Below are positions 35,550 to 59,957 of a stretch of 64,000 bases of DNA, piece by piece. The number at the start of each line of letters is the position of its first letter. Positions within the stretch are counted from its first letter, which is position 1. Made by a program: the position numbers and the translations under genes. Where the stretch lies: the IMG/VR virus record IMGVR_UViG_3300027759_006101, positions 1 through 64,000 of that record; one strand, given 5' to 3'. Under the pieces are notes generated by a model that was given only the letters and a program-made list of their open reading frames with translations, was not told the origin of the DNA and did no database searches.

Positions 35550-35556
35550 TGTATTG

Positions 35557-36162
35557 ATGGAAAAATACTTACCTGAAGACCTAATTGCATTTGAAACAGA
35601 TATTGCAAATTGTTTCAATGAAGGCATTATCAAAGCACCCGTTCATTTATATGATGGCAATGAAGAACAAATCATAAAAGTTTTTCAAGATGTATCAGAA
35701 GATGATTGGGTTTTTTGCACTTGGCGTTCACATTATCAATGTTTGTTGAAAGGTGTGCCAAAAGAACAAGTGAAAACCGATATTTTAAATGGTAAATCTA
35801 TAACTTTATGCTATCCTGAACACAAAGTTTATTCTTCTGCTATTGTAACAGGAAGTATTCCAATTGCTACAGGGGTAGCTTTAGATATAAAGCGTAAAAA
35901 TCAAAATAACAAAGTATGGTGTTTTGTTGGAGATATGTCTTCTGAAACTGGTGTTTTTTTTGAAAACTGGAAATACGCAGTTAATCACGACTTACCAATT
36001 ACTTACGTAATTGAAGACAACAATAAATCAGTTTGTTCAGAAACTCGTAAGGTGTGGAATTGTGATAAGTTATTTTTTGAAAACGAAAATAGAAAAATAA
36101 TTTACTACTCATACACTTCTAAATATCCTCACGCTGGGGCTGGAAAAAGGATTCAATTTTAA
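35557..36162 (+). CDS. Minimal ThDP dehydrogenase E1-alpha-like subunit
   Basis: APVHL, TWRSHY, SAIVTG, GDMSSETG...EDNN; only ~200 aa. Confidence 0.85.
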   Translation: MEKYLPEDLIAFETDIANCFNEGIIKAPVHLYDGNEEQIIKVFQDVSEDDWVFCTWRSHYQCLLKGVPKEQVKTDILNGKSITLCYPEHKVYSSAIVTGSIPIATGVALDIKRKNQNNKVWCFVGDMSSETGVFFENWKYAVNHDLPITYVIEDNNKSVCSETRKVWNCDKLFFENENRKIIYYSYTSKYPHAGAGKRIQF

Positions 36163-36698
36163 TGAAATACTTTGATGAACTTAAAAGATCAATGGAATGG
36201 CTTGCTGAAAAAGAAGATACTTTATTTTTAGGCCAAGCTGTTGAGTATCCAGGCACAGCACTTACAAATACTATTGCAAATGTAGACAAAAGTAAGTTGC
36301 TAGAAATGCCAGTAAACGAAGAAATGCAAATGGGTATGACTTTAGGTATGGCGTTAAATGGTAGTGTTCCTGTATCTTTTTTCCCAAGATGGAATTTTCT
36401 TATATTAGCAGCCAATCAACTAGTAAATCACATCGATAAAATAAATATAATGTCAGATGGTGGATATAAGCCAAAAATCATTATCAGAACAGCTATAGGT
36501 TCACAAAGACCATTGCATCCTCAACACCAACATATTTCCGATTTTACTGCAGGTTTTAAGGCTCTTTGTGATTATGTTGATATAATTAGACTGGAAGAAC
36601 CACATCAAGTTTTTAATGCTTATAAATATGCCTATGAAAGAACAGATAATAGGCCAACATTATTGGTAGAATGGGGAGATTTTTACAGTGAAAAATAA
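36162..36698 (+). CDS. Minimal E1-beta/transketolase pyrimidine-binding subunit, no C-terminal domain
   Basis: FLGQAV, LEMPVNEEMQMG, NQLVN, HPQH; 178 aa. Confidence 0.85.
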   Translation: MKYFDELKRSMEWLAEKEDTLFLGQAVEYPGTALTNTIANVDKSKLLEMPVNEEMQMGMTLGMALNGSVPVSFFPRWNFLILAANQLVNHIDKINIMSDGGYKPKIIIRTAIGSQRPLHPQHQHISDFTAGFKALCDYVDIIRLEEPHQVFNAYKYAYERTDNRPTLLVEWGDFYSEK

Positions 36699-37863
36699 CT
36701 TATCTCATCCTCTTATGAATGACAATATTGATAGAGAAGATATTAATTCTGTAATTGATTTCTTGTCAGGTGAAAATATCCCCAAGCTTACAAATGGACC
36801 TAAAGTTGTTGAATTTGAAAACGCTTGGGGCAACTGGCTTGGAACTAAATATAATCTTTTTGTAAATTCAGGAGCTTCAGCAAATGAGTTAACTATGCTG
36901 GCAATTGCTCATATGATAGGTGAGGGAGAAATTATTGTCCCACCTCTTACTTGGATTTCTGACATTTCTTCAGTCTTATTCGCAGGGCATAAATTAGTTT
37001 TTGTGGATGTAAATTTCACAAATCTTTCTTTTGATATAGACAAGCTTAAAGCAGCAATTACACCAAACACTAAAGCAATTTTCTTAACTCATGTTCTTGG
37101 AATTAACGCTATCACAAAAGAACTCTTAGAAATTTGTGAAAAAAATAATATTCTGCTAATCGAAGATGTATGCGAATCTCACGGTACAACTTATCAAGGA
37201 TGCAAAGTTGGTAATTTTGGATTCGCAAGTAATTTTAGTTTTTATTTTGCACATCATATGTCAACAATTGAAGGTGGCATGATATCCACTAACAATTTTG
37301 AATTTTATCAAGTTTGTCGTGCATTAAGATCTCATGGTATGGTTAGAGAAATGACAAGTTCAGCTATGAAAAACTCTGTCATTGAAGCTAATCCAGACTT
37401 AAATCCTGATTTTATTTTCTTGCGTCCAGCTCATAATTTTAGAAGCACTGAAATCAATGCTGTCATTGGCTTATCACAGTTACCAAAGCTTGATGATAAA
37501 AATCAAGAAAGAATAGATAATTTTGATTTATTTATATCAAATTTAAATTCTGAAAAGTATCATATCGCAATTAACACTGAAGGCAATTGTAACTATGCTT
37601 TTATAGTGATTCTGAAAGAGCCAAATTTTGATAAACGAAATGCTCTGGAAAATAAACTTGCTGAAAATGGAATTGAGTTTAGAAGAGGACTGTCTGGTGG
37701 TGGCAATCAAATGAGACAGCCTTTTTTCAAATCTATTTATCAAGACTTTTCTGATTATCCAGTTATTGAGCATGTGCATAATTTTTCTTGGTATATTGGA
37801 AACTACCCAGGTCTGGAAAAAGAAAAGATTAATTTTTTACTTGAGATTTTAAATAGTGACTAA
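36688..37863 (+). CDS. DegT/DnrJ-family PMP-dependent 3-dehydratase (ColD-type)
   Basis: NSGASAN, IEDVCESHG, SFYFAHHMSTIEGG (His at the Schiff-base Lys position); no Fe-S Cys insertion. Confidence 0.85.
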   Translation: MKNNLSHPLMNDNIDREDINSVIDFLSGENIPKLTNGPKVVEFENAWGNWLGTKYNLFVNSGASANELTMLAIAHMIGEGEIIVPPLTWISDISSVLFAGHKLVFVDVNFTNLSFDIDKLKAAITPNTKAIFLTHVLGINAITKELLEICEKNNILLIEDVCESHGTTYQGCKVGNFGFASNFSFYFAHHMSTIEGGMISTNNFEFYQVCRALRSHGMVREMTSSAMKNSVIEANPDLNPDFIFLRPAHNFRSTEINAVIGLSQLPKLDDKNQERIDNFDLFISNLNSEKYHIAINTEGNCNYAFIVILKEPNFDKRNALENKLAENGIEFRRGLSGGGNQMRQPFFKSIYQDFSDYPVIEHVHNFSWYIGNYPGLEKEKINFLLEILNSD

Positions 37864-37865
37864 AA

Positions 37866-38636
37866 ATGAAAAAAAATTACAGTAATATTAAGATATTAGT
37901 CATAGGCGATTCTTGCACAGATGTTTTTGTGTATGGTAATGCCTTTAGATTAGCACCCGAAGGCCCAGTACCCGTATTCAATCCGGAATCTGAAAAACAG
38001 AATGGGGGAATGGCTTTAAATGTCAAGCATAATATCGAAGCAATTGGGGCAAATGCAACACTCTTGACTCAAAATGAAGACATATTCAAAACAAGATATG
38101 TTGACTCAAGAACAAATAGTCTTTTACTACGTGTAGATACTAATGACACAGCCACTAGAATAAGTAGAGATGTTATTCAAAGCATCACTAATAACACATA
38201 TTTAGATGTTGTATATGATGCAATCATTATTAGTGATTATTGCAAAGGTTTTTTGACAGAAGAAGATATTGATGAAATTTCACTTAATAATTTTAACATT
38301 TTTTTAGATACAAAAAAAATACTAGGTGATTGGTGCAAATACGTTACTTTTATAAAAATTAACTTTTCAGAGTTTGAGCGAACCAAACATACAATTGATA
38401 AATTAGATATTTCTGAAAAACTTATAATAACTAAGTCTGACGATGGTTGTGATTATCAAGGTGAAAATTTTCCAGTAGAAAAAGTGAATATCAAAGATGT
38501 TTCCGGAGCTGGTGATACATTTATTTCTGGGCTTGTATGTGAATATGTCAATTCTTATTCTGTAAAAAATGCGATATTGTTTGCTCAAGAATGTGCCACT
38601 AAAGTTGTTCAAAAAAAGGGAGTTTGTACTATATGA
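37866..38636 (+). CDS. PfkB-family sugar kinase, HldE/RfaE kinase domain only
   Basis: ILVIGD, LAPEGPVPV, GGMALNV, ISDYCKG, KDVSGAGDTF. Confidence 0.85.
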   Translation: MKKNYSNIKILVIGDSCTDVFVYGNAFRLAPEGPVPVFNPESEKQNGGMALNVKHNIEAIGANATLLTQNEDIFKTRYVDSRTNSLLLRVDTNDTATRISRDVIQSITNNTYLDVVYDAIIISDYCKGFLTEEDIDEISLNNFNIFLDTKKILGDWCKYVTFIKINFSEFERTKHTIDKLDISEKLIITKSDDGCDYQGENFPVEKVNIKDVSGAGDTFISGLVCEYVNSYSVKNAILFAQECATKVVQKKGVCTI

Positions 38637-38923
38637 TTATGAAAGAATATTACGCTATGTATTTGACACTTCACCAAAATAAAGTTTGTAGAAGACTTCA
38701 CGTACTTGGCCAAATCATGACTTTATTGTGGATTGCCGGATGTTTGAATTATGGCTATTTTTGGTTTTTGTTATTGACGCCATTTATTGTTTATCCTTTT
38801 GCTTGGAGCGGACACTATTTTTTTGAAAAGAATCAACCAGCAGCATTTAAAGATCCAGTCAAGGCTAAAATTAGTGATTGGATGATGCTTTTTGATATCT
38901 TAAGAGGAAAAATAGATTTTTAA
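38633..38923 (+). CDS. DUF962/Mpo1-like small membrane protein
   Basis: YLTLHQNKVCRRLHV...FAWSGHYFFEKNQPAAF...SDW; start at the ATGA overlap. Confidence 0.8.
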   Translation: MIMKEYYAMYLTLHQNKVCRRLHVLGQIMTLLWIAGCLNYGYFWFLLLTPFIVYPFAWSGHYFFEKNQPAAFKDPVKAKISDWMMLFDILRGKIDF

Positions 38924-39795
38924 TGTCTAACTTAGATTCTTTGATTAGAAACAATTTAGATTTGCCAATATCTGAAGATGTCTCCATTTATAAGGATGTT
39001 GAAAACAGAAAAAAGTTCACAAACGAAATATGTAAAGTTGTAAACACAGAAATTGATAAAACTTTGCATCCCTATGATAAAGATATACTTGAAGATATCA
39101 GAACTAATGGATACGCTATAGTTGAAAATTTTATATCTCCAGACGAAATAGAAGAACTCAAGAAGTACATAAGTAATTTTAAGGGTTACCAATTTCATAT
39201 TCCAAATAGATCCTTTAACAAAATACCTGAAAAATATTCATCTGATTTAAATTGGAATGTTTGCTCTTATAAAACAAATCACTTATTACATAATCCTTTT
39301 TTGCTCAAGCTAATGACAAAACCTGATATAATCTCTTTAGTTCAAGAGTATTTAGGCTGTCTTCCAATGATATCGGGCTTAAATATCTGGTGGAATAAAT
39401 ATACAGGACAAGAGTTTCACACTCAAAAGCTACACAGAGACTATGATGATTTCAAGTTCATAACTATGTTTATTTATCTCACTGATGTAAACACTAAGAA
39501 CGGTCCTCACGTTTACTATCCGAAGACCCATAATGGCGAAGAACCATCTACAGAACCAATCGAAATTACAGCAAAAGCAGGCACAGCAATTTTTGGTGAC
39601 ACATATGCTTTACACTATGGAAAACCCCTAGAAGAAGGCGAAAGGCTTATGTTTTGGACAAGATTCTCTTTGCATAAAAATAATAATTTTTACAGAGATG
39701 GGTCTGAAGAATATATTCAAGAGCCAAGTGTTTTTTTTGATGTTATTGATGACAGTGATATCAATAGACATGTTTTGAGAGCATTTACTAAATAA
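38923..39795 (+). CDS. PhyH-like Fe(II)/2-oxoglutarate dioxygenase
   Basis: NGYAIVENF, LHRDYD (HxD), YLTDV..KNGPH, GDTYALHYG. Confidence 0.8.
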   Translation: MSNLDSLIRNNLDLPISEDVSIYKDVENRKKFTNEICKVVNTEIDKTLHPYDKDILEDIRTNGYAIVENFISPDEIEELKKYISNFKGYQFHIPNRSFNKIPEKYSSDLNWNVCSYKTNHLLHNPFLLKLMTKPDIISLVQEYLGCLPMISGLNIWWNKYTGQEFHTQKLHRDYDDFKFITMFIYLTDVNTKNGPHVYYPKTHNGEEPSTEPIEITAKAGTAIFGDTYALHYGKPLEEGERLMFWTRFSLHKNNNFYRDGSEEYIQEPSVFFDVIDDSDINRHVLRAFTK

Positions 39796-39804
39796 GGAGA
39801 AAAT

Positions 39805-40395
39805 ATGGAAGAAATAGATTATCTTAAAGTTAATCCGGAATACGGAGACACAATGATGGATCTTGTTTTTGCTCAAAGAGTTAAAGAAATTATTGATGAG
39901 TATAAAATTACAACTTGGTTTGAAACTGGAGTTGATGTAGGAACAACAGCATTAACAGTTACAAAAATGGTCGAAAAGTGGATTGGTGTTGAAATTCGTG
40001 AAACTTCTTGTGAAAGAGTAGCTAAAAGATTTTCTGACAATAATGTAACTAATGTTGAAATAATTCAAGGAAACTCTCCTATCGTATTATTGAATAAAAT
40101 GCATACATTAGATGTTGACCATACTATATTTTTTCTGGATGCTCATTGGGGAGCCTACTGGCCACTATTAGATGAAATTGACACAATTTCAAGGGGTAAA
40201 GGAATACTCATAATGCACGATGTGCAAGTACCAGGTCACCCAGAACTAGGCTATGACCAATATGGTGGAAAAATATTAAATTACGATTATGTCAAGGATG
40301 CTCTCGCAAGATGGAGTCCTACGCACAGAATTGAATATAATTCTGAGACTAAGTATATTCATCCCAGGGGAATAATGTACGCATTTCCAAAATAA
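39805..40395 (+). CDS. Class I SAM-dependent methyltransferase-like protein
   Basis: WFETGVDVGTT, IIQGNSP, IFFLDAHW, ILIMHD. Confidence 0.75.
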   Translation: MEEIDYLKVNPEYGDTMMDLVFAQRVKEIIDEYKITTWFETGVDVGTTALTVTKMVEKWIGVEIRETSCERVAKRFSDNNVTNVEIIQGNSPIVLLNKMHTLDVDHTIFFLDAHWGAYWPLLDEIDTISRGKGILIMHDVQVPGHPELGYDQYGGKILNYDYVKDALARWSPTHRIEYNSETKYIHPRGIMYAFPK

Positions 40396-40445: not shown

Positions 40446-41300
40446 TTAGCTTACGGTAATTCTTGAAACTGCATAGTCATTGATGAGCGCAAAACCGAGC
40501 TCTTCGTAAACAACCCATCCAAGTCTAAGTCTCTTTGGATCGTCTGCTGGGAGAACAGTAATGTCTTGGCGAACTGGCATTGCACCAACGAATTGGGCAG
40601 GAGCAAGAACGTAAACACTGTTCTTTGGAACCATTGTGGAGACATGGATGTCTGCGGAATAAATATGTCCGTAGAGACCAGTCATAAGGATATCTCTTTG
40701 AGTTGCCTCATCGAAGAATTCCTTACCCCAGTTTCTGATATCCTTGTATCTTTGCGGGTGAAGAACAACCTTAGCGCCGATTAACTCGTGCTCTTCGATG
40801 AGGGTCAACGCAAGGTTGACGTTCTCTGGTTGAAGAGTACCAGAAACGGAGATTGATTGGTCAGTTGGAACACCAGCATTGATGACCTTGAAGACTTCAG
40901 TATCTTCTTGTCTTTGGAGGGAGTCCTTAGCACGGACTTGAGCTCTATCGACGATGTAGAATCTTCTTTGGCGAATCTCATTGAGTCTGATCTGTGGATG
41001 AGCAGCCAACTCAATGGTTGGAACAAGAAGCTCTTCTGCTTCAACTTCTGCAGCAGGAACAGCACCACGCTTAGGAATAACGTATGACTTTACAGCCACG
41101 TCTCTCTCATAGCGAGCTAAAGCACCTTGTGGGAGCTCATCGACCATAAGAAGCTTACGGCCAATTGCTTGGTACATAAGGGAGGTCTTGATTGGCTCAA
41201 CCATTGCTTGTGCAAGTGCTGTGCGTCCCTCTGGAGTCTCAAGAGCCATTGCAATAATGGACTCTCTTTGCTCATTTGTGTTTCTCTTAATCATTGACAT
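40446..41300 (-). CDS. Major capsid protein, HK97 fold
   Basis: 284 aa, last gene of the head operon, AGGAG SD; VVLHPQRYKDIR, GLYGHIYSADIHVS and GWVVYEELG fit the HK97 A/P-domain pattern. Confidence 0.85.
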   Translation of the reverse strand: MSMIKRNTNEQRESIIAMALETPEGRTALAQAMVEPIKTSLMYQAIGRKLLMVDELPQGALARYERDVAVKSYVIPKRGAVPAAEVEAEELLVPTIELAAHPQIRLNEIRQRRFYIVDRAQVRAKDSLQRQEDTEVFKVINAGVPTDQSISVSGTLQPENVNLALTLIEEHELIGAKVVLHPQRYKDIRNWGKEFFDEATQRDILMTGLYGHIYSADIHVSTMVPKNSVYVLAPAQFVGAMPVRQDITVLPADDPKRLRLGWVVYEELGFALINDYAVSRITVS

Positions 41301-43854: not shown

Positions 43855-46800
43855 TTAGTCAATCCAAGTAATTGAGACATCCAATTTTGATGGATCTTTT
43901 TTGCTTGTTTTTACAGATGTTCTAGAATAGTTTCCACAGCTATGGCAGAAAGTATTATTCTTTACTTTATTTGCTTTTCTATTTCCACAACTTGGACAAA
44001 TCATACCGACAGGAAGCATTTTAGATGCTGTTCTGTCAAAGTCAGGCATTGCAGTTTTTAAGTAAACATCTGAATCAACTGTTGCTGAAAGTCTAACCAT
44101 TGTCTTGATTGAGTTTGCAACTGTTCCTAAAGCAGGAGGCGCAGGAGAAGCAGCTGGAACCTCAGTTGGAGCTGTTGCTGCACCAAGGCCCATATCAGGT
44201 CCTAAACCACCAAGGTCTTCAGACTCTGGAGATTCTTTACCCTTGTCACCCATAGATATAAGCTCAATTGATTGAAGAATCTTGTATGTTGTTCCGCAGT
44301 TTTGACAATCTGCATTTGATTCAGAAATATTTACATCATCTGATCCGCAAACTGGGCAAACACTTCCCCAAGGTTTCTTTTCACCTGGCTCTGTCATTGC
44401 ATCAAGATCTGATGTTTCGTTCATTTCTGTACCAGTCATAGCAGAGATTCCTAAATCTCCGCCAATAGGAGCCATAGCGCCTAAATTAGGGTCTACAGGG
44501 CCTGCAGCAGGAGAAGCGGGAGCTGGAGCACCCATAGGAGGAGCTACTTGTGCATATTTAGATAAAACTTCATCTCTTCTATTTTTTCTAGCAATTCTTG
44601 CACCTTCAGTCATTACTACAGGTAATTCTTCAGCAATTACTTCTGCATCCGCATTTTCTTCGTCAACCTTGAAAGTTTTGGATGACATTGTTGAAACTGT
44701 TGCGGTTACATCACCATTTTCTGAAACAACTAAATCAGTAAATGAGAAAGTGTTTGGATCTACTGTAAATCCGTGACCTTGAAGAACTTCCATTGCTTTT
44801 TGTTTGAATGCTTCATCAAAGCTATCGTCTCCAGGAGACATTCCGTTCAAATCTTCAGCAACGCACATAAATCTAAGGCAATCTGATTTTGTGTGTGTAA
44901 CAGTCATTCCAGCAGTTCTGTCTGCTTCTTGTTTTGCTTCAATAGCTCTTGAAACTAATTTTTCTGCCAAATCGAAATCTTGGCAAAGTCTTTTTGCTGC
45001 TAATGCAATTTTGCGAGTTGGAATATTGAAGTTTGTTGAATAATCAGCAAGCCATCCAATCAAATTATTCTCAATTTTTTCTGCACTGGCAGTCTTGACT
45101 CCCCAAAACTCTCTTCTTGCTCTAGATCTTAATCTACCTTCAGTTGCAGTGGTGGTTTTTGCTCTATCAATTGCTGCCATAAGTTGTTTTTCTGGCATTG
45201 AGTCAACGACATCAACACCTTCACCTGGTGCAGTTCTTGTTTCTTCAGAGGACATTGCCATAGCACTAATTGCAGATTTCAAATCGTCTTTAGAAATTAA
45301 GTCACCAGCTCCGTCTACAGCTGATCTAAGCGCTGATCTGAGTTCTTCATTCTTTGAAGGTTGAGTATCAACATCAAGGCCAGTTTCAGGAGCAGCAGCC
45401 CCAGCCATCAAAAGTTCTGCAATTCTAGTGACACCTTCTTTGGTGATTTCGCCTTCTTCAACAGCAACCGAAAGTGCTTGCGAAAGGTCTTGAGCAGTTA
45501 CTTCTGAAGTTACAGCAGCGCCTAATTGTTTGAGGACAGCTGTGACTGGATTATCAACAGAAGATTGTCCAAAAAATTCTTCTTTCTCAGTATTTGCTGC
45601 ATCCATTTCTGTACCAGCAGCAGCAGTTCCAATCATTTCTGGAAGCATTGGTTCTTCAGATAAAACTTGTGCAACTCTCAAAATTGTCTTTGGAGTTTCA
45701 AACGAAGAAACAACTGCTTTGCCTAATGCTTCAATTGTCTTGACCATGATAAGTTGTGCAGGAGCACTTCCTTCAGATCTGTGCTTAGAAAGTCTATTTT
45801 CTAAAACTTCAGTTGGAACACCCTTAGTTACTTCATCAACAAGTTCAGTCAGAGATTTTCTAACTTCATCATCCTTGACTCTTCTTCCATAAAGTCCAGC
45901 TTTACCAAGTAAAATTTCCTTGACAGCTTCGGCACCTTCGCCTGTTCTTTTAGTATCAAGTTGTTGTTCTTTGCCAACAGTAGGAGCACCAGTATTTTTA
46001 GTTTTCACACCGTCTTGTAAATTACTATATGACTCACCAGATCTTACTTCTTCTAAAAGACTTTCTCTGTCGCCATCTCTGTCCTTAACATCAAGTAAAG
46101 CTGTTCTGACAAATGATGAATAATCTTTTAACAGTTCTGCAGCAACTCTTGTGCCTTGTCCTGATTCCATCATAGAAATTTGATTTTCATTGAGGATAGG
46201 TTCCCAAGAAGTTCTTTTACCATTAGTAAATCCGGTTATCGATCCATCAGTTGAAAGAACAACTCTATTACCCGCACTGTCTTCAACCTTAAAATCGATT
46301 GTGACAGCAGCAGCTAATTTTTTTCTTTGCTCTGATGCAATCTTAGCAAAATGATCCATTTGATTTCTGCTCCCCGCCTCTATAGGCTTGTTTGTTTTTA
46401 TGTTTTTATTTCTCTCATTAGCAATTCTAATGACATTTTGAATACTTTGATTGACTTGTTCTACGTTATTCAAATTATTTTTTAAACTCAGAATACTTTG
46501 TGCAAAGTTTCCAAATTTATCAACAGTTTTATGATTTGTACTTGCAAAAACTTCTCTTCTACCATCTTTAGAAGCCCAAACTAAATTATAGTTTGTAGAT
46601 GCTAATGCAACTCCACTTCCAATAGGATTTGGATTACTGAAGTTAGTCATATCCATAACTTTTCCAACTGATTCAGTTGGAGAATAATTAGCTAAACCAA
46701 TTTGTGGGCTTGCCATTTGTTGCGATGGATTTGGTTGTGCAGCTTGTGGCATACTTTGAGGTTGATTTATTGGCTGTGGTCTTTGACCACTACCAACGTC

Positions 46801-47994
46801 AACTCCATCGTCGATCATGTCTTGCATAGTAGACTGAAGTTCAGCCATTGACTTAGTGATTTTGCCTACGTGTCCTAAATCAACATTGTCTTTACGTGCA
46901 AACATATTCATTACAGCAACTTCTAAAAAGTTCAAAGAAAGATTGATAAGATCAAGAATGTTAAGGCCAGATCTTGGATCAATTCCTAAGGCTCCCAAAA
47001 CTGCTGCAACTGTTGAATTTTGATTAGCTCCCTGACCAGCTAATAGTTGTCCGCCAACTAATGTGCCTGCTTGTTGTGCAAGTCTGATAGCAACATTGGT
47101 AGTTTGATTTGCTTGTCTCAAACAGCTTTCATATGCTGTTCTTTCATTAATATTTTCAGGGATTTCTTGTAAAGCTAAAACAATATTTGAATTTATTTCA
47201 TTAGCTTTCTTTTCTAAATTTGTTGCTGCACTTAAAACGTCATCAACATCATAAATTTCTTGAATTTCACAAGACTCAAAAGCACCATCACCTACACAGC
47301 TTAATTCTATAAACTTAACTCCATAGTTTTTTTCATAAGCTTTCTTGCCGGTTTCAGGATAAGTCTTGCCTTTATATTTTTTCAAGTGCTCACAATAGTC
47401 TCTTTCAGTATAGGCTTTATTGTTACAAATGGAACAAACGCCCCACTCAACACTTGCACCCATACTTACATCGTGAATAACACCTGTTCTAATATTTCTT
47501 GCGATATCAGGATATGCTTCCTCATCTACAAAGAAAGTACAGTAAACACAGTTTTCTTTTTCGTCCCATTCAGCGTAAACAACCATTCCTTTAGCTTGTT
47601 CAATATCATCATTTTTATGATTTGTATATATTGGAACACCTTCGAAAGATTTATATGCTGGGATTTTTTGACCTTTTAATTCAACTTCTTTAAGTAATTC
47701 TTCTTTAGAAAACAAGTCACCGTTTGCATTAACAACGTCTGCATCAATTGCTCTGGCTCTTACCCAAAGTAATTTAGCACCTTTACGAGCTTGCATTTCT
47801 TTAACGATATCAAAATCTTTGTATTTTTCTAATACTTCTTTAGGATCAGCATAGAGTGATTGTAAACCAATTTTTGCTGCTTCCCTCATATTTGAAGAAG
47901 CAGTTTTTATTAAGTGCTCTCTTGCCGCAACTCTGTCGTTTTCATTAAGAAAACTTTGCACAGTTATAGCACCACCTTTTGCAACTCTATACAT
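43855..47994 (-). CDS. Prohead (maturation) serine protease polyprotein with a long C-terminal extension
   Basis: N-terminal NANGDLF...YTNH...GMV...IRTGVIHDVSMG...IELSCV assemblin/HK97-like domain; ~1100 aa extension ending in two CxxC pairs. Confidence 0.75.
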   Translation of the reverse strand: MYRVAKGGAITVQSFLNENDRVAAREHLIKTASSNMREAAKIGLQSLYADPKEVLEKYKDFDIVKEMQARKGAKLLWVRARAIDADVVNANGDLFSKEELLKEVELKGQKIPAYKSFEGVPIYTNHKNDDIEQAKGMVVYAEWDEKENCVYCTFFVDEEAYPDIARNIRTGVIHDVSMGASVEWGVCSICNNKAYTERDYCEHLKKYKGKTYPETGKKAYEKNYGVKFIELSCVGDGAFESCEIQEIYDVDDVLSAATNLEKKANEINSNIVLALQEIPENINERTAYESCLRQANQTTNVAIRLAQQAGTLVGGQLLAGQGANQNSTVAAVLGALGIDPRSGLNILDLINLSLNFLEVAVMNMFARKDNVDLGHVGKITKSMAELQSTMQDMIDDGVDVGSGQRPQPINQPQSMPQAAQPNPSQQMASPQIGLANYSPTESVGKVMDMTNFSNPNPIGSGVALASTNYNLVWASKDGRREVFASTNHKTVDKFGNFAQSILSLKNNLNNVEQVNQSIQNVIRIANERNKNIKTNKPIEAGSRNQMDHFAKIASEQRKKLAAAVTIDFKVEDSAGNRVVLSTDGSITGFTNGKRTSWEPILNENQISMMESGQGTRVAAELLKDYSSFVRTALLDVKDRDGDRESLLEEVRSGESYSNLQDGVKTKNTGAPTVGKEQQLDTKRTGEGAEAVKEILLGKAGLYGRRVKDDEVRKSLTELVDEVTKGVPTEVLENRLSKHRSEGSAPAQLIMVKTIEALGKAVVSSFETPKTILRVAQVLSEEPMLPEMIGTAAAGTEMDAANTEKEEFFGQSSVDNPVTAVLKQLGAAVTSEVTAQDLSQALSVAVEEGEITKEGVTRIAELLMAGAAAPETGLDVDTQPSKNEELRSALRSAVDGAGDLISKDDLKSAISAMAMSSEETRTAPGEGVDVVDSMPEKQLMAAIDRAKTTTATEGRLRSRARREFWGVKTASAEKIENNLIGWLADYSTNFNIPTRKIALAAKRLCQDFDLAEKLVSRAIEAKQEADRTAGMTVTHTKSDCLRFMCVAEDLNGMSPGDDSFDEAFKQKAMEVLQGHGFTVDPNTFSFTDLVVSENGDVTATVSTMSSKTFKVDEENADAEVIAEELPVVMTEGARIARKNRRDEVLSKYAQVAPPMGAPAPASPAAGPVDPNLGAMAPIGGDLGISAMTGTEMNETSDLDAMTEPGEKKPWGSVCPVCGSDDVNISESNADCQNCGTTYKILQSIELISMGDKGKESPESEDLGGLGPDMGLGAATAPTEVPAASPAPPALGTVANSIKTMVRLSATVDSDVYLKTAMPDFDRTASKMLPVGMICPSCGNRKANKVKNNTFCHSCGNYSRTSVKTSKKDPSKLDVSITWID

Positions 47995-48117: not shown

Positions 48118-50499
48118 TTATAAATATTTTTCACCATCTCCATTTGAACTTTGACCTGTACGTTTTTTAATTGCATTTATCAAGACGTTCAAACAATCTT
48201 GAGGATGATCTTGTAGCTCTTTATCAGTAAATCTAATTATAATCCAACCATTGACTGCTAATTCTGAATCTCTTCTCTTATCTTTAGCAATTTTATCTGG
48301 ATTGTTGTGCCAAATTTCTCCATCTGCTTCAACACCAATTTTCAAGTTTGGAATTGCTCCATCCAATTGATAATCCATTGTTGGACCAGCTGAATATTGA
48401 GCATAAAGTGGGAAAGGCATATTCAATGACATCAATAATCCATATAATTTCTTTTCTAAAGACGTAAACATCTTTGGTTGATTAATGTTTTCTAATTTTT
48501 TTGCAATAACCTGTCTGATAGATTCATTTTTGTTATTTGCATAATGATGCATTTCATTCATAGCATAATTATTCAATGGGTAAGAAAGCGAACCGCCAAT
48601 AAACGGTGTATCAATTACTCCAAAAAGACCATCATACTCAACTGGCAGAGGGCCTAAATTAGCTCTACCAGTAACAGGTTTCAGACTCATTAAGAAAGCT
48701 TCGTGAGCTGAAGATTTTATTTTCTTACTTGCGGTTCTAATTTTATCTGATTTATTTAAGTCGTCTAGTCTATTTTGATATATACTATTTACAATGTCTG
48801 ATGCGAGCCTATAATTTTCAAGCATAGATTTTGCTGTAGGCGCTGGAGCTTCTGGCATTGGGGCCGGAGGAGCTGCTCCAGCTGGAGAAGCACCAGGAGC
48901 TCCACCAACACCAAGGTCTGGTGCAGGAGGGGCTGCGCCCATGTCTGCACCTCCAGATGCGCCAAACCCTTGACCTGTTACGCCACCACTTTGAAAACTT
49001 AATGATATATTTGGTGTTCCAAAACTTTGGTCGCTCATAAAATTAGCGCCTTGTTCATATCTAAGTCTTTCAATTTCTTGGTCAGAATCAAGACCAAATG
49101 CTTCAATCAAGGAAACATTTGAAATTACACCATTCTGATTTGCTGTTACAAGCATCTGCAATTTGCCAGTGTCGTCTCTTAACTGCAGGTCATCAAATTT
49201 AATACGTGGATAAACAATTTCTTCTTGCCCACGTTCTCCTTCAATAACAAATCCATTCCATTTTGCAACGGGCATGAAAATATTCATTTCTACCCAGTGA
49301 GCAACTTCTCTTCGGAATGTTTCTAGTCTTTGAGCCATTGCAAGAAGACCAACTTGAGCGTTTCCGTAAGTAGGTCCTTCACCATTCAACAAGGCTTTAT
49401 TAAGCATGACACCATCAAGAATTTCTTGTTCGATAAGTTCAAATTCACCAGTCAAAGGGTGAATTTTTCCAGTTGCACCATACCACTCTAGATCAAAGTT
49501 ATGGTGAGTAACAAGAGTTAGGTTTGGATCATTCGCAATTGACGCTAATTCATCTTGAACATTGTCGATGTCTTCTTGAGATGCTGGTCTTGTATCGCTA
49601 CCAATCTTTACAACTTTGATTGGTAAAATAAGGCGTTCAGCAATCATATACTGAGCTTGTCTCAGTTTATCTTTGTATGTCAAAATTGGGAATAATGGTC
49701 TTATCATAGAGATGCCATAATCTTCCCAAGGATTTGAACCATACTTAAAGTGATGTATGGAAATCTGGTTTAATTTGATAGGATCGCCCTTGAGAATAAG
49801 TTTCTTAATTCCGTCTGGGATAGAATCATAAATATCTTTAGGATGTCTTTCGTTTACAATTCGGATTTCTTCAGCAGACGGTCTGTAAGCATAGCTACCC
49901 TGCTGGTCAATCATCCCTGGAGTCTTAATTACATTATCAGGGTTTAAAATAGAAATGGATTTCCAAGAAGCTCCATCGTGTTGACATTCTTGATTTTTAT
50001 CTTCGTCCCAGTTTGAACCGTGGCAGTGAGGGCAATCAATAGATAACAGAACAAAAGCATCACCTAATAAATGATATACTTTTGAAATTTCAGGAAGCCA
50101 TTTTTGAAAATTAAGTTTTTCTACTAATTTTTCAAAATAATCTTTAACGTAAGAAGATGAACATTCTAATTTCCAACCAGAGAATGGATAATTGGTATAG
50201 AAGTTAATTGCTGCAGAAACTTTTGGTTCATTGTTCTTCCACCAGTTTGCCCATAGATACACTTCACGTCGAGCATTTGGGATTTGAAATGAAGATGGAG
50301 TAAGGAATGGAGAATAGAAGTTAGGAGCAGTTGTGATAGAATTGATACTGGCAGATCTTGTAACACCAGGACCTAATCCTAAGCCAATACGACTACTTGC
50401 ATATGCTTGTTTTGATTCTGAAGTGGCTGTACTAGTCGAGCCTGAAACTTGTGTTGCTGCTGTTCTAATAGCAGATGCAAGAGATGTTTTTGTTGCCAT
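48118..50499 (-). CDS. Portal protein fused to a C-terminal DUF559/Vsr-like endonuclease
   Basis: Portal-like core (KVSAAINFYTNYP, YHLLGDAF, HHFKY...PWEDYGISMI, IKFDDLQL), P/A/G linker, then FTSLEKKL...QY...LDGAI...VEADGEIWH...DKRRD..L..NGWIIIRF. Confidence 0.8.
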   Translation of the reverse strand: MATKTSLASAIRTAATQVSGSTSTATSESKQAYASSRIGLGLGPGVTRSASINSITTAPNFYSPFLTPSSFQIPNARREVYLWANWWKNNEPKVSAAINFYTNYPFSGWKLECSSSYVKDYFEKLVEKLNFQKWLPEISKVYHLLGDAFVLLSIDCPHCHGSNWDEDKNQECQHDGASWKSISILNPDNVIKTPGMIDQQGSYAYRPSAEEIRIVNERHPKDIYDSIPDGIKKLILKGDPIKLNQISIHHFKYGSNPWEDYGISMIRPLFPILTYKDKLRQAQYMIAERLILPIKVVKIGSDTRPASQEDIDNVQDELASIANDPNLTLVTHHNFDLEWYGATGKIHPLTGEFELIEQEILDGVMLNKALLNGEGPTYGNAQVGLLAMAQRLETFRREVAHWVEMNIFMPVAKWNGFVIEGERGQEEIVYPRIKFDDLQLRDDTGKLQMLVTANQNGVISNVSLIEAFGLDSDQEIERLRYEQGANFMSDQSFGTPNISLSFQSGGVTGQGFGASGGADMGAAPPAPDLGVGGAPGASPAGAAPPAPMPEAPAPTAKSMLENYRLASDIVNSIYQNRLDDLNKSDKIRTASKKIKSSAHEAFLMSLKPVTGRANLGPLPVEYDGLFGVIDTPFIGGSLSYPLNNYAMNEMHHYANNKNESIRQVIAKKLENINQPKMFTSLEKKLYGLLMSLNMPFPLYAQYSAGPTMDYQLDGAIPNLKIGVEADGEIWHNNPDKIAKDKRRDSELAVNGWIIIRFTDKELQDHPQDCLNVLINAIKKRTGQSSNGDGEKYL

Positions 50500-57845: not shown

Positions 57846-59957
57846 TCATCTTCTGTTCAAATTGACCATTTTTGATTTAGGCAATCTTGCGATAATTTTA
57901 GAAGTAAGACATTCAAAAGAAACTGCGGCAACACAGTCACATATGTCGTCTTTGTAACCAGACAATGCTTCGATATAGTATCTTTTGCCTTTCCATTTTT
58001 TTTGCAAGAATAAAAACTGAGTTTTTGCTTCTTGAACTTCATTTAGTGGTTGTAGTGTATTGTGCATATCTGCGTAACTACCACCTGATAAATCATAGAC
58101 ATCAATCCTGTCATCTCTAATTAATTGAGCTAATTCTGTATAGATTTTTTCTTTATATTCTTTATTAAATTGTCTCTCTATAATTGGAACGCCATAACTT
58201 TGAAGCTTTATAACTGATGATTGTGAATTCCAGTGATCAATTGAAACTTGCTTAAATCTAAATCTACGATGTAAATCAATTACATAGTCTTCAACTTCTT
58301 TTTCTTTGACAGGTTGATTTCTTGTAAGAGGATTCCAAAAATGGATATGATCTATGACAACTCTCTTAAGAGGTGTATGGTCAGGCCCAATAGTCCCATA
58401 CATTGTCTCTGTATGAGCAATGACAAGAGCATAATAGTCAGATGTTCTCGCAGGGTCAATATGGCAAAAATATTCGAAAAGACCGTCTGGCATTTCTTTT
58501 CTTTTAACCATATTTTGACTTTTGAACATTTTATCTATATCTTCGGACATAAACATAGGGTCTGATGATGAAGCACCAAACTCAGCTCCATATTGCATTT
58601 GAAATTCTTGTGGGTCTTTTCTCTTTTGCCCATCAAGCCATTCTTTATCAATGTTTGGATTAGTAAGCCAAGTAGGAAGTCTCATCACAAGAGTTGTTGG
58701 ATCTTCCTGTCTATTTTCATGCAAGTCATATAGCAATCCAATAGGGCCTTTGGGGTTGGAAAGAAGCATCATTTTGCCATCTTTACCAAATGTAGCTAGT
58801 GATGGCTTCAAATCATCATAAAGACCGTAGTCAACGCCAGAATCTGGATTATCTCCTGCCATGGCTGCAACTTCGTCCATAATAATAGACCAACAAGTAA
58901 GACCAACAAGACCTGAAGCATTACTACTACCACATCTTAGGACTAATGATCCAGCAAAAGGATTGATTTTATCTTCTGCTCTTCTGACATTTTCTTCCCT
59001 ATCGTGTTCAGTATAAAACCTCATTTCAAGTTCAGTATCTTTACCTATATATGGAGCAAAAAATGGAGAAGCCAGAACTGTCTGTTTGATTTTTGAGAAG
59101 ATTGCTTTTTTAGCCTGTTCTTCATTTCTAGCAACGTTCAAGAGTACAATCTCATCAAATTCCATTAGTCCATATCTTGCTTGTGGATGACCCATAGATA
59201 TTAAACGATATAATTCATAAAGAGCCATAGCAGATACAAGGAACGATTTGCCAGAACGTCTCCCCAGTACTAAGACTAATTCTTCAAACTTGTATCTTTT
59301 TGTGCATTTTTCTTGAACTTGCATCCTTAGTTTTGGATCAAATTCCTCAGAATACAATAAATCGTTTTCTGTTTGAAACCCATCTATTATTGGCCTTGAT
59401 TCTAATACTTCTACCTGTCTTTCAGCATCTGGATTAGTTGCTTCTTGACGAGCATATCTATATCTTTCATCTCTTACGTTACTGTCAAGCCTAGAACACT
59501 GTAAACAAGGCGAATTTACAACGTTAAAAATAGTTTTAAATTGCTTTTCTTGTTCTCTAGCTTTAAAGAAAGCAGTTTCATTTTTATGGACATAATTCCA
59601 TACGCAACCATTACATCCAGAATCTGATTTATCATCTAAAATTGTAAGACTGGTATTTCCTTCCTGACCCATATAAAAACATTTCAAAATTAATTTTTGC
59701 CAAGGATAAGGCCTTAAATTACAAAAATACGGATGCTCAATAAATGTAATAATGTCTACAATTTGGTCAGGATTGAATCTATCTTTTGCAGGTTTGGCAG
59801 GAGGTGCAACTTCTTGTCTTCTTGCTGGAACAATTTCATCAGCAAAATCATTTGCATATTCAGTATCTTTGAAAAGTTCAGTTACAGAATTGGCTTGTTG
59901 TAGAAGCTGACTTCTAAGTTCATTGGAAGACTTGACTACAGGAGTTGGTTTTCTCAT
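57846..59957 (-). CDS. terL: Terminase large subunit
   Basis: Walker A LGRRSGKS, Walker B IIMDE, LSNP coupling motif, FQMQYGAEF, nuclease HIDPA and KDDICD. Confidence 0.95.
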   Translation of the reverse strand: MRKPTPVVKSSNELRSQLLQQANSVTELFKDTEYANDFADEIVPARRQEVAPPAKPAKDRFNPDQIVDIITFIEHPYFCNLRPYPWQKLILKCFYMGQEGNTSLTILDDKSDSGCNGCVWNYVHKNETAFFKAREQEKQFKTIFNVVNSPCLQCSRLDSNVRDERYRYARQEATNPDAERQVEVLESRPIIDGFQTENDLLYSEEFDPKLRMQVQEKCTKRYKFEELVLVLGRRSGKSFLVSAMALYELYRLISMGHPQARYGLMEFDEIVLLNVARNEEQAKKAIFSKIKQTVLASPFFAPYIGKDTELEMRFYTEHDREENVRRAEDKINPFAGSLVLRCGSSNASGLVGLTCWSIIMDEVAAMAGDNPDSGVDYGLYDDLKPSLATFGKDGKMMLLSNPKGPIGLLYDLHENRQEDPTTLVMRLPTWLTNPNIDKEWLDGQKRKDPQEFQMQYGAEFGASSSDPMFMSEDIDKMFKSQNMVKRKEMPDGLFEYFCHIDPARTSDYYALVIAHTETMYGTIGPDHTPLKRVVIDHIHFWNPLTRNQPVKEKEVEDYVIDLHRRFRFKQVSIDHWNSQSSVIKLQSYGVPIIERQFNKEYKEKIYTELAQLIRDDRIDVYDLSGGSYADMHNTLQPLNEVQEAKTQFLFLQKKWKGKRYYIEALSGYKDDICDCVAAVSFECLTSKIIARLPKSKMVNLNRR

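What the first reader, a model, noticed from the sequence alone, without database searches (positions are those of the whole stretch)
48118..48960. Portal protein carries a C-terminal DUF559/Vsr-like endonuclease behind a cleavable linker
After the portal core come a G/A/P-rich linker, RLAS and RTAS sites (~48730), and a nuclease-like domain (~48150-48470) with QY, DG, ExDGxxWH and DxxRDxxLxxxGW motifs apparently intact. I saw no Hint splice motifs. A portal ring would display multiple nuclease copies inside the prohead or release them on maturation. Possible roles: packaging termination, an ejected anti-host nuclease, or a domesticated EDxHD-type homing endonuclease.
Basis: partly seen in the sequence, partly recalled or inferred. 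Interest (0 to 1): 0.72.

Follow-up and report, generated by a model that had tools for sequence, protein, structure and literature searches.

The report
Phage portal with built-in DNA-cutting domain
The portal protein of this uncultivated 358-kb freshwater phage ends in an intact-looking DNA-cutting enzyme on a floppy tether. All its close and middle-distance relatives have kept this arrangement under strong selection, so these phages probably carry about a dozen nuclease copies inside the head; what the nuclease cuts is still unknown.

Summary
ORF 48118-50499 (-), 793 aa, consists of:
- a Mu/phage-G-type portal core (res 55-495);
- a 60-aa linker, 63% Gly/Ala/Pro;
- a 120-aa helical module;
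- a DUF559/Vsr/EDxHD-type nuclease (res 676-782).

The best structural match is the homing endonuclease I-Bth0305I (PDB 3R3P, TM 0.74).

It is not an assembly artefact. 102 of 112 representative portal clusters carry the nuclease. These form one clade, and all 32 full-length IMG/VR loci are fused.

The six active-site residues (E682, D713, E724, D726, H731, D740) are essentially invariant in 183 portals. dN/dS of the nuclease (0.025) equals that of the portal core (0.023). The two parts co-diverge (Mantel r 0.75). In at least six, probably ten, distant relatives an intein sits inside the ExDG catalytic motif.

The "RLAS/RTAS cleavage sites" are not supported: they lie in a helix found only in the near clade. 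C-terminal portal trimming does have a precedent in phage Mu.

TerL keeps its own nuclease motifs, so a role in ending packaging is unlikely.

My preferred reading is a capsid-internal nuclease, probably released by the prohead protease and delivered with the DNA. Location, cleavage and substrate are inferred, not shown.

Novelty: a new variant of the known portal-enzyme fusions.

The parts
48118..50499 (-). Portal-nuclease fusion gene, 793 aa, one open frame
   Evidence: ORF list. Pfam Portal_Mu, DUF559 and MTES_1575. PHROG portal. More than 100 homologous clusters at 49-93% identity have the same architecture.
50338..50499 (-). N-terminal extension, res 1-54: Ser/Thr/Ala-rich, basic (pI 11), variable
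   Evidence: Conservation profile; composition; dN/dS 0.16.
49015..50337 (-). Portal core, res 55-495 (clip/stem/wing/crown equivalent)
   Evidence: PHROG and Pfam portal hits. 28% identity to Bacillus phage G gp14 portal over res 59-487. Mean identity to the query about 0.8-0.9 per 20-residue block. dN/dS 0.023.
48835..49014 (-). Flexible linker, res 496-555: 63% Gly/Ala/Pro, no Lys or Arg, variable in length
   Evidence: Composition. Indels and low identity in 110 aligned sequences. dN/dS 0.11. Distant relatives and phage G gp14 have comparable Gly-rich low-complexity tails: G/M/P/A-rich in the distant relatives, G/P-rich in phage G.
48475..48834 (-). 'Mid' helical module, res 556-675, basic (pI 9.2); contains RLAS (48799-48810) and RTAS (48727-48738); no known family
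   Evidence: The AlphaFold2 model shows helices at res 559-588, 597-605, 644-654 and 659-671, mostly pLDDT 70-90. No Pfam hit; only weak Atlas leads. Present in near relatives only. dN/dS 0.087.
48154..48474 (-). Vsr-like / DUF559 / EDxHD-type endonuclease domain, res 676-782
   Evidence: Pfam and NCBIfam DUF559. phmmer hit to 3R3P. Foldseek: 3r3p TM 0.74, 3hrl 0.71, Vsr 1cw0/1vsr. dN/dS 0.025.
48280..48456 (-). Span holding the predicted catalytic codons: E682 (48454-48456), D713 (48361-48363), E724 (48328-48330), D726 (48322-48324), H731 (48307-48309), D740 (48280-48282)
   Evidence: They correspond to I-Bth0305I E170, D196, an acidic residue, N208, H213 and D222, which equal Vsr E25, D51, F62, H64, H69 and D97. 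E724, D726, H731 and D740 rest on the phmmer alignment read against PMC3239194. E682 and D713 lie outside that alignment and are assigned from motif order and the structural match. All six are invariant or nearly so in 183 portals.
43855..47994 (-). Next gene downstream: 1379-aa protein with an N-terminal HK97-type prohead protease (res ~52-242) and a long tail; candidate enzyme for clipping the portal tail
   Evidence: phrog_18299 head maturation protease E 4e-20 and phrog_2774. Weak NCBIfam hit to a prohead protease/MCP fusion model. That it cleaves the portal is inference only.
57846..59957 (-). Large terminase, 703 aa, with its own nuclease-type C-terminal domain
   Evidence: phrog_2 TerL E 1e-28 over res 213-677. 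Walker A GRRSGKS is visible in the sequence. Invariant in the TerL alignment: MDE of the IIMDE motif; D501/D507 (IDPARTSD); D574; D670/D671/D674 (YKDDICD). Aligns over res 224-701 with annotated terminases.
40446..41300 (-). HK97-fold major capsid protein, 284 aa; completes the head module
   Evidence: phrog_2522 E 5e-68; NCBIfam capsid_Caudo_2 E 2e-56.

Best explanation
The gene encodes a true two-part structural protein. The first part is a Mu/phage-G-type portal. It is followed by a disordered Gly/Ala/Pro tether and a 27-kDa module that ends in a catalytically competent, Mg2+-dependent endonuclease of the Vsr/DUF559/EDxHD kind.

Portal C-termini (the crown side) point into the head. Assembly of the dodecamer therefore places up to twelve nuclease modules inside the prohead, at the inner mouth of the DNA channel.

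Phage Mu's portal loses its C-terminal 124 residues to its prohead protease. By analogy, the HK97-type protease encoded by the next gene probably cuts the tether. At 27 kDa the freed module is presumably too large to escape the shell. It would then stay with the packaged genome, leave with it at infection, and nick or cut DNA in the newly infected cell (host or rival DNA). The phage's own DNA would be spared by sequence or methylation specificity.

Shown here: the architecture, the fold, the conserved active site, a single ancient origin, strong purifying selection, and co-divergence with the portal.

Inferred: the position inside the head, cleavage of the tether, ejection, and the substrate.
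For: Architecture and fold.

The fusion is real and old:
- 102 of 112 representative clusters with a complete portal core carry the nuclease.
- They form one clade with support 0.92; the only two exceptions inside it are a frameshifted copy and a 1.9-kb low-coverage contig.
- All 32 full-length IMG/VR loci are fused.

The domain is functional:
- Catalytic residues are kept in 173/173 to 180/183 portals.
- dN/dS is 0.025 for the nuclease against 0.023 for the portal core.
- Core and nuclease distances correlate, Mantel r 0.75, 0 of 999 permutations reached it.
- In distant relatives a canonical intein sits between the catalytic Glu and Asp (VE|C...HN|CDG). Both junctions were read in 6 clusters; only the C-side junction was read in 4 more. 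Such placement is typical of conserved functional sites.

Topology: crown and wing stay inside the capsid (PMC11445458).

Precedents:
- C-terminal portal trimming: Mu gp29 (PMC11915804).
- Portal or MuF domains fused to enzymes predicted to be packaged and injected (PMC5512222; PMC5576092).

Possible self-protection: the genome encodes two N6/N4 DNA methyltransferases.
Against: - There are no virion proteomics, no structure and no assay. No cultured phage among 50,697 records has the fusion.
- No conserved cleavage motif was found in the linker. R.AS is confined to the near clade.
- Injected effectors fused to MuF or portal domains are usually polymorphic and are followed by an immunity gene (PMC5576092). 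This nuclease is monomorphic, as conserved as the portal itself, and is followed by the protease gene. That fits a housekeeping role at least as well.
- A nuclease sharing a capsid with its own genome needs a sparing mechanism, and none has been demonstrated.
- The homodimer prediction gave no answer, so whether it nicks or makes double-strand cuts is open.
Confidence: 0.4

Rival explanations
1. The nuclease stays tethered to the portal and works on the phage's own chromosome from inside the head. It might nick the DNA at specific sites, or process a DNA end, as the DNA passes the inner mouth of the channel during packaging or at the end of ejection. This would be a housekeeping morphogenetic role.
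For: - Conservation equals that of the portal core, the two parts co-diverge strictly, and there is no clean loss in 103 clusters. That pattern suits a core function better than an arms-race effector.
- The only universal element between portal and nuclease is a long flexible tether.
- Nucleases needed for head morphogenesis are known: T4 gp4, a restriction-endonuclease-fold head-completion protein (PMC7824862).
- Vsr-type enzymes are nickases (PMC3239194).
Against: - No precedent exists for a nuclease acting on DNA from inside a capsid.
- Nothing is known about nicks in these genomes.
- Twelve nucleases next to densely packed DNA would need tight control.
Confidence: 0.25
2. It is a homing-type endonuclease gene that landed at the 3' end of the portal gene and still acts selfishly. 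Made late in the cytoplasm, it would cut the genomes of related co-infecting phages (marker exclusion). The portal fusion would be incidental.
For: - The best PDB match is the EDxHD homing endonuclease I-Bth0305I.
- Its relatives in cultured phages include annotated homing endonucleases.
- Portal genes of this clade are heavily invaded by mobile inteins: 86 of 112 clusters.
Against: - It is fixed in the whole clade, has a single origin, and co-diverges with the portal.
- dN/dS is 0.025 over deep divergence. Selfish endonucleases normally show patchy distribution and decay once fixed.
- No NUMOD or HTH DNA-binding region was detected.
- It is the only copy in the genome.
Confidence: 0.1
3. The domain has lost catalysis and serves as a DNA-binding anchor or plug for a genome end at the inner portal.
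For: - Its location next to the DNA channel.
- The basic mid module, pI 9.2.
- SPP1 gp7 is a portal-bound DNA-binding protein inside the head (PMC5576092).
Against: All six catalytic positions are kept in about 98-100% of 183 sequences. That is not expected for a binding-only domain.
Confidence: 0.07
4. The portal nuclease makes the packaging (headful or termination) cut in place of the terminase.
For: - The nuclease sits on the packaging vertex.
- HNH nucleases assist terminases in other phages (title and abstract of PMC3592412, listed).
Against: - The portal C-terminus lies inside the head, while the terminase docks outside.
- TerL is full length. Its C-terminal domain aligns with annotated terminases and has invariant acidic motifs.
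Confidence: 0.03
5. Assembly or gene-calling artefact: two separate genes wrongly joined.
For: One MAG contig (L003) shows the portal and a 260-aa DUF559 ORF as separate genes.
Against: - That case is a single frameshift inside the G-rich linker.
- 32 of 32 complete IMG/VR loci and more than 100 clusters from independent samples are fused in frame.
Confidence: 0.01

Closest known systems
I-Bth0305I and the EDxHD homing endonucleases (PDB 3R3P; PMC3239194)
   Same: It is the best sequence hit (E 0.004) and the best structural hit (TM 0.74). The composite active site is shared: Glu, Asp, an acidic residue plus one more position, His, Asp.
   Different: This domain has no NUMOD or HTH DNA-binding region. 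It is not in an intron or intein and is not free-standing. It is fused to a portal, fixed in its clade and co-diverging with it, not patchy. Position 726 is Asp where I-Bth0305I has Asn208.
DUF559 (PF04480; E. coli YcjD type, N. gonorrhoeae NGO0050 = PDB 3HRL) and REase_MTES_1575 (PF18741)
   Same: DUF559 scores above its Pfam gathering cutoff. NCBIfam PRK09767 covers nearly the whole model (positions 16-113 of 117). The fold matches 3hrl at TM 0.71.
   Different: Those are small free-standing bacterial proteins or C-terminal domains of helicases, also in cultured phages. None is fused to a portal, and their function is untested.
Vsr very-short-patch-repair endonuclease (PDB 1VSR, 1CW0)
   Same: Same divergent PD-(D/E)xK fold, and residues corresponding to D51, H69 and D97. 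JGI auto-annotation gives homologues this name.
   Different: There is no Pfam Vsr (PF03852) hit at E <= 0.1. The genome has no partner C5 cytosine methyltransferase. The regions that recognise the T:G mismatch were not examined, so the auto-annotation should not be taken as function.
Portal- or MuF-domain fusions to enzymes (polyvalent proteins, MuF polymorphic toxins; PMC5512222, PMC5576092)
   Same: An enzymatic domain is appended to a capsid-internal, portal-associated protein and predicted to be packaged and delivered with the DNA. More than half of the MuF toxins carry nuclease domains.
   Different: The portal fusions named in the passages I read carry PBECR RNase, 2H phosphoesterase, InPase or lysozyme domains, not Vsr/DUF559. 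Those are polymorphic, mostly from temperate phages, and often followed by immunity genes. This one is monomorphic, ancient, found in jumbo phages, and followed by the protease gene.
Phage Mu portal gp29 (gpH), prototype of Pfam Portal_Mu
   Same: Same Pfam portal family. Its last 124 residues are missing from the virion structure, attributed to cleavage by protease I (PMC11915804). This is the precedent for trimming a portal's C-terminal tail.
   Different: The paper does not attribute a nuclease to Mu's tail. The relationship of the two portal cores is distant (E 5e-7).
T4 gp4 head-completion nuclease (TnsA-like restriction-endonuclease fold; PMC7824862 citing Benler 2020)
   Same: A virion-morphogenesis nuclease of the restriction-endonuclease superfamily, linked to packaging and head completion.
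   Different: It is a separate protein from a different branch of the fold, found in T4-like phages, and not fused to the portal.
Bacillus phage G portal gp14 (nearest cultured relative)
   Same: 28% identity over the portal core. It also ends in a long Gly/Pro-rich low-complexity tail.
   Different: At 648 aa it has no nuclease domain and falls outside the nuclease-bearing clade.

Membership tests
Phage portal protein (Portal_Mu PF06074 / phage-G-like) | Sequence membership in a portal family | tested here: met
   PF06074 29.8 bits against a cutoff of 23.9. phrog_16240 portal E 1e-28 plus five other portal PHROGs. Phage G portal E 1e-55.
Phage portal protein (Portal_Mu PF06074 / phage-G-like) | Position in a head-morphogenesis module (terminase ... 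portal, protease, capsid protein) | tested here: met
   TerL 57846-59957, portal, protease fusion 43855-47994 and MCP 40446-41300 all lie on the minus strand.
Phage portal protein (Portal_Mu PF06074 / phage-G-like) | Dodecameric ring at one capsid vertex | not testable with these tools
   Needs cryo-EM or a multimer model.
DUF559 / Vsr-like branch of the PD-(D/E)xK nucleases | Profile match above the curated threshold | tested here: met
   PF04480 27 bits against 20.6. PF18741 36.2 bits against 38.2, just under. NCBIfam PRK09767 covers model positions 16-113 of 117.
DUF559 / Vsr-like branch of the PD-(D/E)xK nucleases | Vsr-like alpha/beta fold | tested here: met
   Model pLDDT 83.6. Foldseek: 3r3p TM 0.74, 3hrl 0.71, 1cw0/1vsr about 0.5, plus RAP and PvuRts1I domains.
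DUF559 / Vsr-like branch of the PD-(D/E)xK nucleases | Catalytic Asp, His and Asp (Vsr D51/H69/D97) plus an N-terminal Glu | tested here: met
   D713, H731, D740 and E682 are present and kept in at least 181 of 183 relatives.
DUF559 / Vsr-like branch of the PD-(D/E)xK nucleases | Metal-dependent nucleic-acid cleavage | not testable with these tools
   Needs an enzyme assay.
EDxHD homing endonucleases | Composite E-D-x-H-D active site | tested here: met
   Residues alignable to I-Bth0305I E170, D196, H213 and D222.
EDxHD homing endonucleases | N-terminal NUMOD/HTH DNA-binding region | tested here: not met
   No Pfam family on res 556-680 even at E <= 5. Only weak Atlas leads. Distant relatives have no module at all between linker and nuclease.
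EDxHD homing endonucleases | Mobile context (intron, intein or free-standing) with patchy distribution | tested here: not met
   In-frame C-terminal domain of the portal, one clade, no clean losses, co-divergence. Single copy in the genome.
EDxHD homing endonucleases | Site-specific cleavage of an allele lacking the element | not testable with these tools
   Needs an assay.
Intein / Hint-mediated splicing element | Hint splicing blocks (N-terminal Cys/Ser, C-terminal His-Asn followed by Cys/Ser/Thr) | tested here: not met
   No Hint or intein family in this protein or in the genome. Relatives do carry inteins at other positions and inside the nuclease motif.
Vsr mismatch-repair endonuclease proper | Vsr family profile (PF03852) and a partner Dcm-type C5 methyltransferase | tested here: not met
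   PF03852 was not among the hits at E <= 0.1. No PF00145 match in the 358-kb genome.
Portal/MuF-enzyme fusions (packaged effectors, polyvalent proteins) | Portal or MuF domain followed by a C-terminal enzymatic domain | tested here: met
   class described in PMC5512222.
Portal/MuF-enzyme fusions (packaged effectors, polyvalent proteins) | Polymorphic C-terminal domains and an adjacent immunity gene | tested here: not met
   One nuclease type throughout the clade. The next gene is the prohead protease.
Portal/MuF-enzyme fusions (packaged effectors, polyvalent proteins) | Presence in virions and delivery into the host | not testable with these tools
   No cultured representative. Needs virion proteomics.

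The most novel reading that the evidence does not exclude
Twelve portal-tethered nucleases act on the phage's own chromosome from inside the capsid. They would nick it at defined sites, or process a genome end, as the DNA slides past the inner mouth of the portal channel. That would be a step of DNA packaging or ejection not recognised before, and it would be obligatory in a large clade of freshwater jumbo phages.
Probability: 0.2. Interest if true: 0.85.

Novelty: new variant of a known kind. Interest (0 to 1): 0.6.

Why it matters
Portals are usually seen as passive rings, valves and headful sensors. Here an entire, deeply branching clade of uncultivated jumbo phages has kept an active-looking DNA endonuclease on the capsid-internal end of the portal. 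Contigs in this clade reach 316 kb and this genome is 358 kb. The nuclease is as conserved as the portal itself.

Either main outcome would be informative:
- If the enzyme is delivered into the host, it is a conserved, stoichiometrically packaged "first-strike" nuclease, unlike the variable toxins fused to MuF proteins.
- If it acts on the phage genome inside the head, it defines a new step in packaging.

It is also the first strongly conserved biological context I found for the uncharacterised DUF559 family. It offers a compact Vsr-type nuclease whose specificity could be tested directly.

The same portal genes are remarkable intein hot-spots, with up to about five or six per gene. That may interest people who study mobile-element ecology.

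Tried and rejected
1. Assembly artefact: rejected.
2. Natural split into separate portal and nuclease genes: the one apparent case (P0125 on L003) is a frameshift in the G-rich linker. The short "nuclease-only" proteins P0244 and P0260 looked up, and all 32 short hits, which sit on short contigs, look like contig-end fragments.
3. Vsr-Dcm repair pair: no C5 methyltransferase and no Vsr profile hit.
4. Hypermodified DNA as self-protection: no thymidylate-synthase-type enzyme; only two N6/N4 methyltransferases.
5. Nuclease-less terminase:
   - The AlphaFold2 model of TerL failed (pLDDT 39).
   - PDB sequence and profile searches found nothing.
   - Pfam found nothing on the TerL C-terminal part.
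   - The question was settled only by motifs, the PHROG hit and tblastn coverage.
6. Protease type and specificity: no PDB hit and only a weak NCBIfam hit. No cleavage motif could be derived, and R.AS is not conserved in distant members.
7. Identity of the mid module: Pfam and Atlas gave nothing usable.
8. Homodimer prediction for res 556-793: no answer.
9. Literature: no paper in the library mentions a portal-DUF559 or portal-EDxHD fusion.
Full report
**What is there**

The window is the first 64 kb of a 358,269-bp linear IMG/VR virus record, estimated 89% complete. The flagged stretch is the 3' third of one uninterrupted ORF, 48118..50499 on the minus strand, 793 aa.

Pfam finds Portal_Mu (res 229-468) and DUF559 (res 706-776), both above their gathering scores, and REase_MTES_1575 just below its score. 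PHROGs gives six portal families, the best at E 1e-28. NCBIfam's DUF559 model covers res 678-780.

The gene sits in a head module on the same strand:
- large terminase, 57846-59957;
- portal;
- a 1379-aa protein whose N-terminus is an HK97-type prohead protease, 43855-47994;
- an HK97-fold major capsid protein, 40446-41300.

No intein signature exists in the gene or in the genome.

**Anatomy**

An alignment of 110 full-length sequences, the query plus 109 homologues, divides the protein as follows:
- A variable basic N-terminal extension, res 1-54.
- A highly conserved portal core, res 55-495.
- A 60-residue linker, res 496-555. It is 63% Gly/Ala/Pro, has no Lys or Arg, and is full of indels.
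- A moderately conserved, basic, helical "mid" module, res 556-675. It holds RLAS and RTAS.
- A nuclease domain, res 676-782, as conserved as the core.

AlphaFold2 on res 556-793 with 53 aligned sequences gave a confident model, pLDDT 83.6 and pTM 0.79. Foldseek against the PDB ranks first the catalytic domain of the EDxHD homing endonuclease I-Bth0305I (3r3p, TM by target 0.74). Next come the DUF559 protein NGO0050 (3hrl, 0.71), Vsr (1cw0/1vsr), RAP domains and PvuRts1I-type enzymes. 3R3P is also the only PDB hit by sequence.

I read that alignment against the I-Bth0305I paper (PMC3239194). It covers res 719-765, so it directly supports four of the correspondences:

| This protein | I-Bth0305I / Vsr equivalent |
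|---|---|
| E724 | the extra conserved acidic residue (Vsr F62 position) |
| D726 | N208 / Vsr H64 |
| H731 | H213 / Vsr H69 |
| D740 | D222 / Vsr D97 |

E682 (E170 / Vsr E25) and D713 (D196 / Vsr D51) lie upstream of that alignment. I assign them from the order of the motifs and the structural match.

**Is the fusion real, and how old is it?**

- A word-indexed search of 5.8 billion proteins returned more than 100 clusters at 49-93% identity, 762-817 aa long, carrying both the portal and the DUF559/MTES_1575 Pfam marks. Some sit on contigs of up to 204 kb.
- An exhaustive HMMER scan of 1.84 billion representatives returned 3,920 relatives.
- I scored all fetched proteins with my own HMMs for core, mid and nuclease. 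Of 112 representative clusters with a complete core, 102 have the nuclease.
- Eight of the ten without it are portals at 35% identity or less. On a tree of the portal core rooted with phage G gp14, these eight fall outside the nuclease-bearing clade (support 0.92).
- The two exceptions inside the clade are weak. P0125 has a single frameshift in the G-rich linker and the nuclease frame continues directly afterwards. P0188 is on a 1.9-kb contig at 2.5x coverage.
- All 32 complete loci fetched from IMG/VR are fused in frame, 766-798 aa.
- The nearest cultured relative, Bacillus phage G gp14 (648 aa), has a Gly/Pro-rich tail but no nuclease.
- None of 50,697 phage records has the fusion. There, the nuclease's relatives at 21-33% identity are helicase C-termini, annotated homing endonucleases and small DUF559 proteins.

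The fusion therefore arose once and has been kept throughout a large, uncultivated clade. Samples include freshwater lakes. One fragment was binned into an Actinomycetota MAG, which is at most a weak hint about the host.

**Is the nuclease functional?**

- Across 183 nuclease-bearing portals the six active-site positions are kept as follows: E682 173/173, D713 183/183, E724 182/183, D726 180/183, H731 181/183, D740 181/183.
- Nei-Gojobori dN/dS over 182-186 pairs, depending on the region, is 0.025 for the nuclease and 0.023 for the core. It is 0.087 for mid and 0.113 for the linker.
- Core and nuclease distances are correlated: Mantel r 0.75, reached by 0 of 999 permutations. The two parts have evolved together.
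- Many distant relatives are 1,100-3,003 aa long because they carry inteins (Hint, Intein_splicing, LAGLIDADG and Hom_end domains) at recurrent portal sites.
- In ten clusters an intein appears to sit inside the nuclease motif. In six of them both junctions were read as ...VE | C...(intein)...HN | CDG..WH, between the catalytic Glu and Asp. In the other four only the C-side junction was read.
- Inteins characteristically occupy conserved functional sites. This is established knowledge, used here as inference. Splicing would be needed to rebuild the site.

Together these results make a dead or decaying domain very unlikely.

- *Cleavable linker at RLAS/RTAS.* Both motifs belong to the mid module's long helix. 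R.AS occurs in 100 of 123 near-clade spacers but only 4 of 79 distant ones. In the distant ones the spacer is just a 92-186-aa low-complexity tether running into the nuclease. I found no conserved acidic or other candidate P1 position in the linker. So these specific sites are not supported.
- *Cleavage as such remains plausible.* In phage Mu, the prototype of this Pfam family, the last 124 portal residues are absent from the virion and are attributed to protease I (PMC11915804). Here the protease gene is the immediate neighbour.
- *Packaging termination.* Crown and wing domains stay inside the capsid (PMC11445458). TerL aligns over res 224-701 with annotated terminases. Its Walker A motif (GRRSGKS) is visible in the sequence, and the IIMDE motif and three acidic motifs (D501/D507, D574, D670/D671/D674) are invariant in the TerL alignment. 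This role is unlikely. My attempts to confirm the TerL fold failed.
- *Domesticated EDxHD homing endonuclease.* The kinship is the best available match. The defining mobile context and the DNA-binding region are absent. If that was its origin, it has long been domesticated.

**How it most likely works**

Shown:
- a portal with a disordered tether and an active-looking Vsr/DUF559-type nuclease;
- a single ancient origin;
- selection as strong as on the portal core.

Inferred from established portal topology: up to twelve copies hang in the prohead interior, at the inner mouth of the channel.

Two mechanisms then compete.

1. *Preferred (0.40).* The neighbouring protease clips the tether as in Mu. 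The 27-kDa module remains in the head, exits with the DNA, and cuts or nicks DNA early in the infected cell. This fits the known class of portal- and MuF-enzyme fusions predicted to be packaged and injected (PMC5512222, PMC5576092). The two N6/N4 methyltransferases in the genome could mark self DNA.
2. *Rival (0.25).* The nuclease stays tethered and processes the phage's own DNA, by nicking or end processing, during packaging or ejection. The monomorphic, core-like conservation and the universal tether fit this at least as well. T4 gp4 shows that morphogenesis can require a restriction-endonuclease-fold nuclease (PMC7824862).

Selfish homing activity (0.10), a non-catalytic DNA anchor (0.07), a substitute for the terminase nuclease (0.03) and an artefact (0.01) are less likely, for the reasons given above. 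The homodimer prediction gave no answer, so nickase versus double-strand cutter is open.

**Comparison with what is known, and novelty**

The domain is a member of DUF559, the Vsr-like branch of the PD-(D/E)xK nucleases: profile, fold and catalytic residues were all met. It works like, but is not a member of, the EDxHD homing endonucleases, because two defining features were not met. It is not Vsr proper, having neither the profile nor a Dcm partner.

Portal-enzyme fusions are a described theme. The passages I read name PBECR RNase, 2H phosphoesterase, InPase and lysozyme fusions. I found no paper on a Vsr/DUF559 nuclease fused to a portal. The ESM Atlas holds only an automatically named cluster.

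I therefore rate it a new variant of a known kind. It is unusual in being ancient, fixed in its clade and as constrained as the portal itself.

Interest is 0.6.

Noticed in passing
Relatives P0121-P0264 (for example P0229, 3003 aa; P0175, 1854 aa); sites correspond to window portal res ~80-90, ~100, ~330-345 and ~370-380: Portal genes of this clade are intein hot-spots. 86 of 112 representative clusters carry one to four or more insertions of over 100 aa (median 346 aa) with Hint, Intein_splicing, LAGLIDADG_3 or Hom_end domains at a few recurrent sites. The window's own portal and genome have none.
   Followed up: partly
P0170, P0190, P0203, P0225, P0231, P0238 (both junctions read); P0160, P0191, P0218, P0229 (C-side junction only); equivalent to window 48322-48330: A canonical intein (starts with Cys, ends His-Asn, +1 Cys) sits between the catalytic Glu and Asp of the nuclease motif (VE|C...HN|CDG..WH). 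In these proteins the Ala of ExDG is replaced by the +1 Cys.
   Followed up: yes
window 43855-47994 (-): A 1379-aa protein: an HK97-type prohead protease at res ~52-242, followed by about 1,100 residues of mostly low-complexity sequence. Near the C-terminus are two CxxC...CxxC zinc-ribbon-like motifs (CPVCG..CQNCG and CPSCG..CHSCG). It may be a protease-scaffold or internal-protein fusion.
   Followed up: partly
window ~22743-40395, both strands: A roughly 17-kb sugar-nucleotide or glycan biosynthesis island inside the phage. It has five NAD-dependent epimerase/dehydratases (several paralogous), a 3-dehydroquinate-synthase-like enzyme, a thiamine-pyrophosphate enzyme, an HpcH-type aldolase, a short-chain dehydrogenase, a glycosyltransferase and a DegT-type aminotransferase.
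   Followed up: partly
L003:5500-5620 (NCBI GCA_040384225.1, contig JAWVHC010001365.1): In one MAG contig a single frameshift in the G-rich linker splits the gene into a 522-aa portal and a 260-aa DUF559 ORF. I could not tell whether this is a sequencing error in a homopolymer-rich stretch or a real variant.
   Followed up: partly
L002:5791-7737 (Bacillus phage G gp14): The phage G portal also ends in about 140 residues of Gly/Pro-rich low-complexity tail, without a nuclease. A disordered capsid-internal portal tail therefore seems older than the nuclease fusion.
   Followed up: partly
G000:C1:131541-132191 (+) and 174468-175076 (-), outside the window: The genome encodes two N6/N4 DNA methyltransferases. 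It has no C5 methyltransferase and no thymidylate-synthase-family enzyme.
   Followed up: no
window 49015-48943, portal res ~493-514: The first third of the 'linker' is not random. A motif close to F-G-x-P-x-F-S-x-x-F-Q-S-G-x-V-T-G-x-G-F-G-A is well conserved in the near clade (G509 and G511 in 109 of 110, F512 in 106 of 110). Its role is unknown.
   Followed up: no
window 1-2000, and 2695-22179: The contig start is very AT-rich (GC 24.6% against about 33% elsewhere). Seven of the large ORFs between 2.7 and 22 kb, including ones of 1565, 882 and 817 aa, gave no PHROG hit at E <= 1e-5. The 882- and 817-aa ones also gave no Pfam hit at E <= 0.01.
   Followed up: no
P0272 (161-aa fragment, 95% identical to res 676-793): A contig-end fragment of this portal-nuclease is deposited as part of an 'Actinomycetota bacterium' MAG. 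This could be a binning artefact or a weak hint about the host.
   Followed up: no
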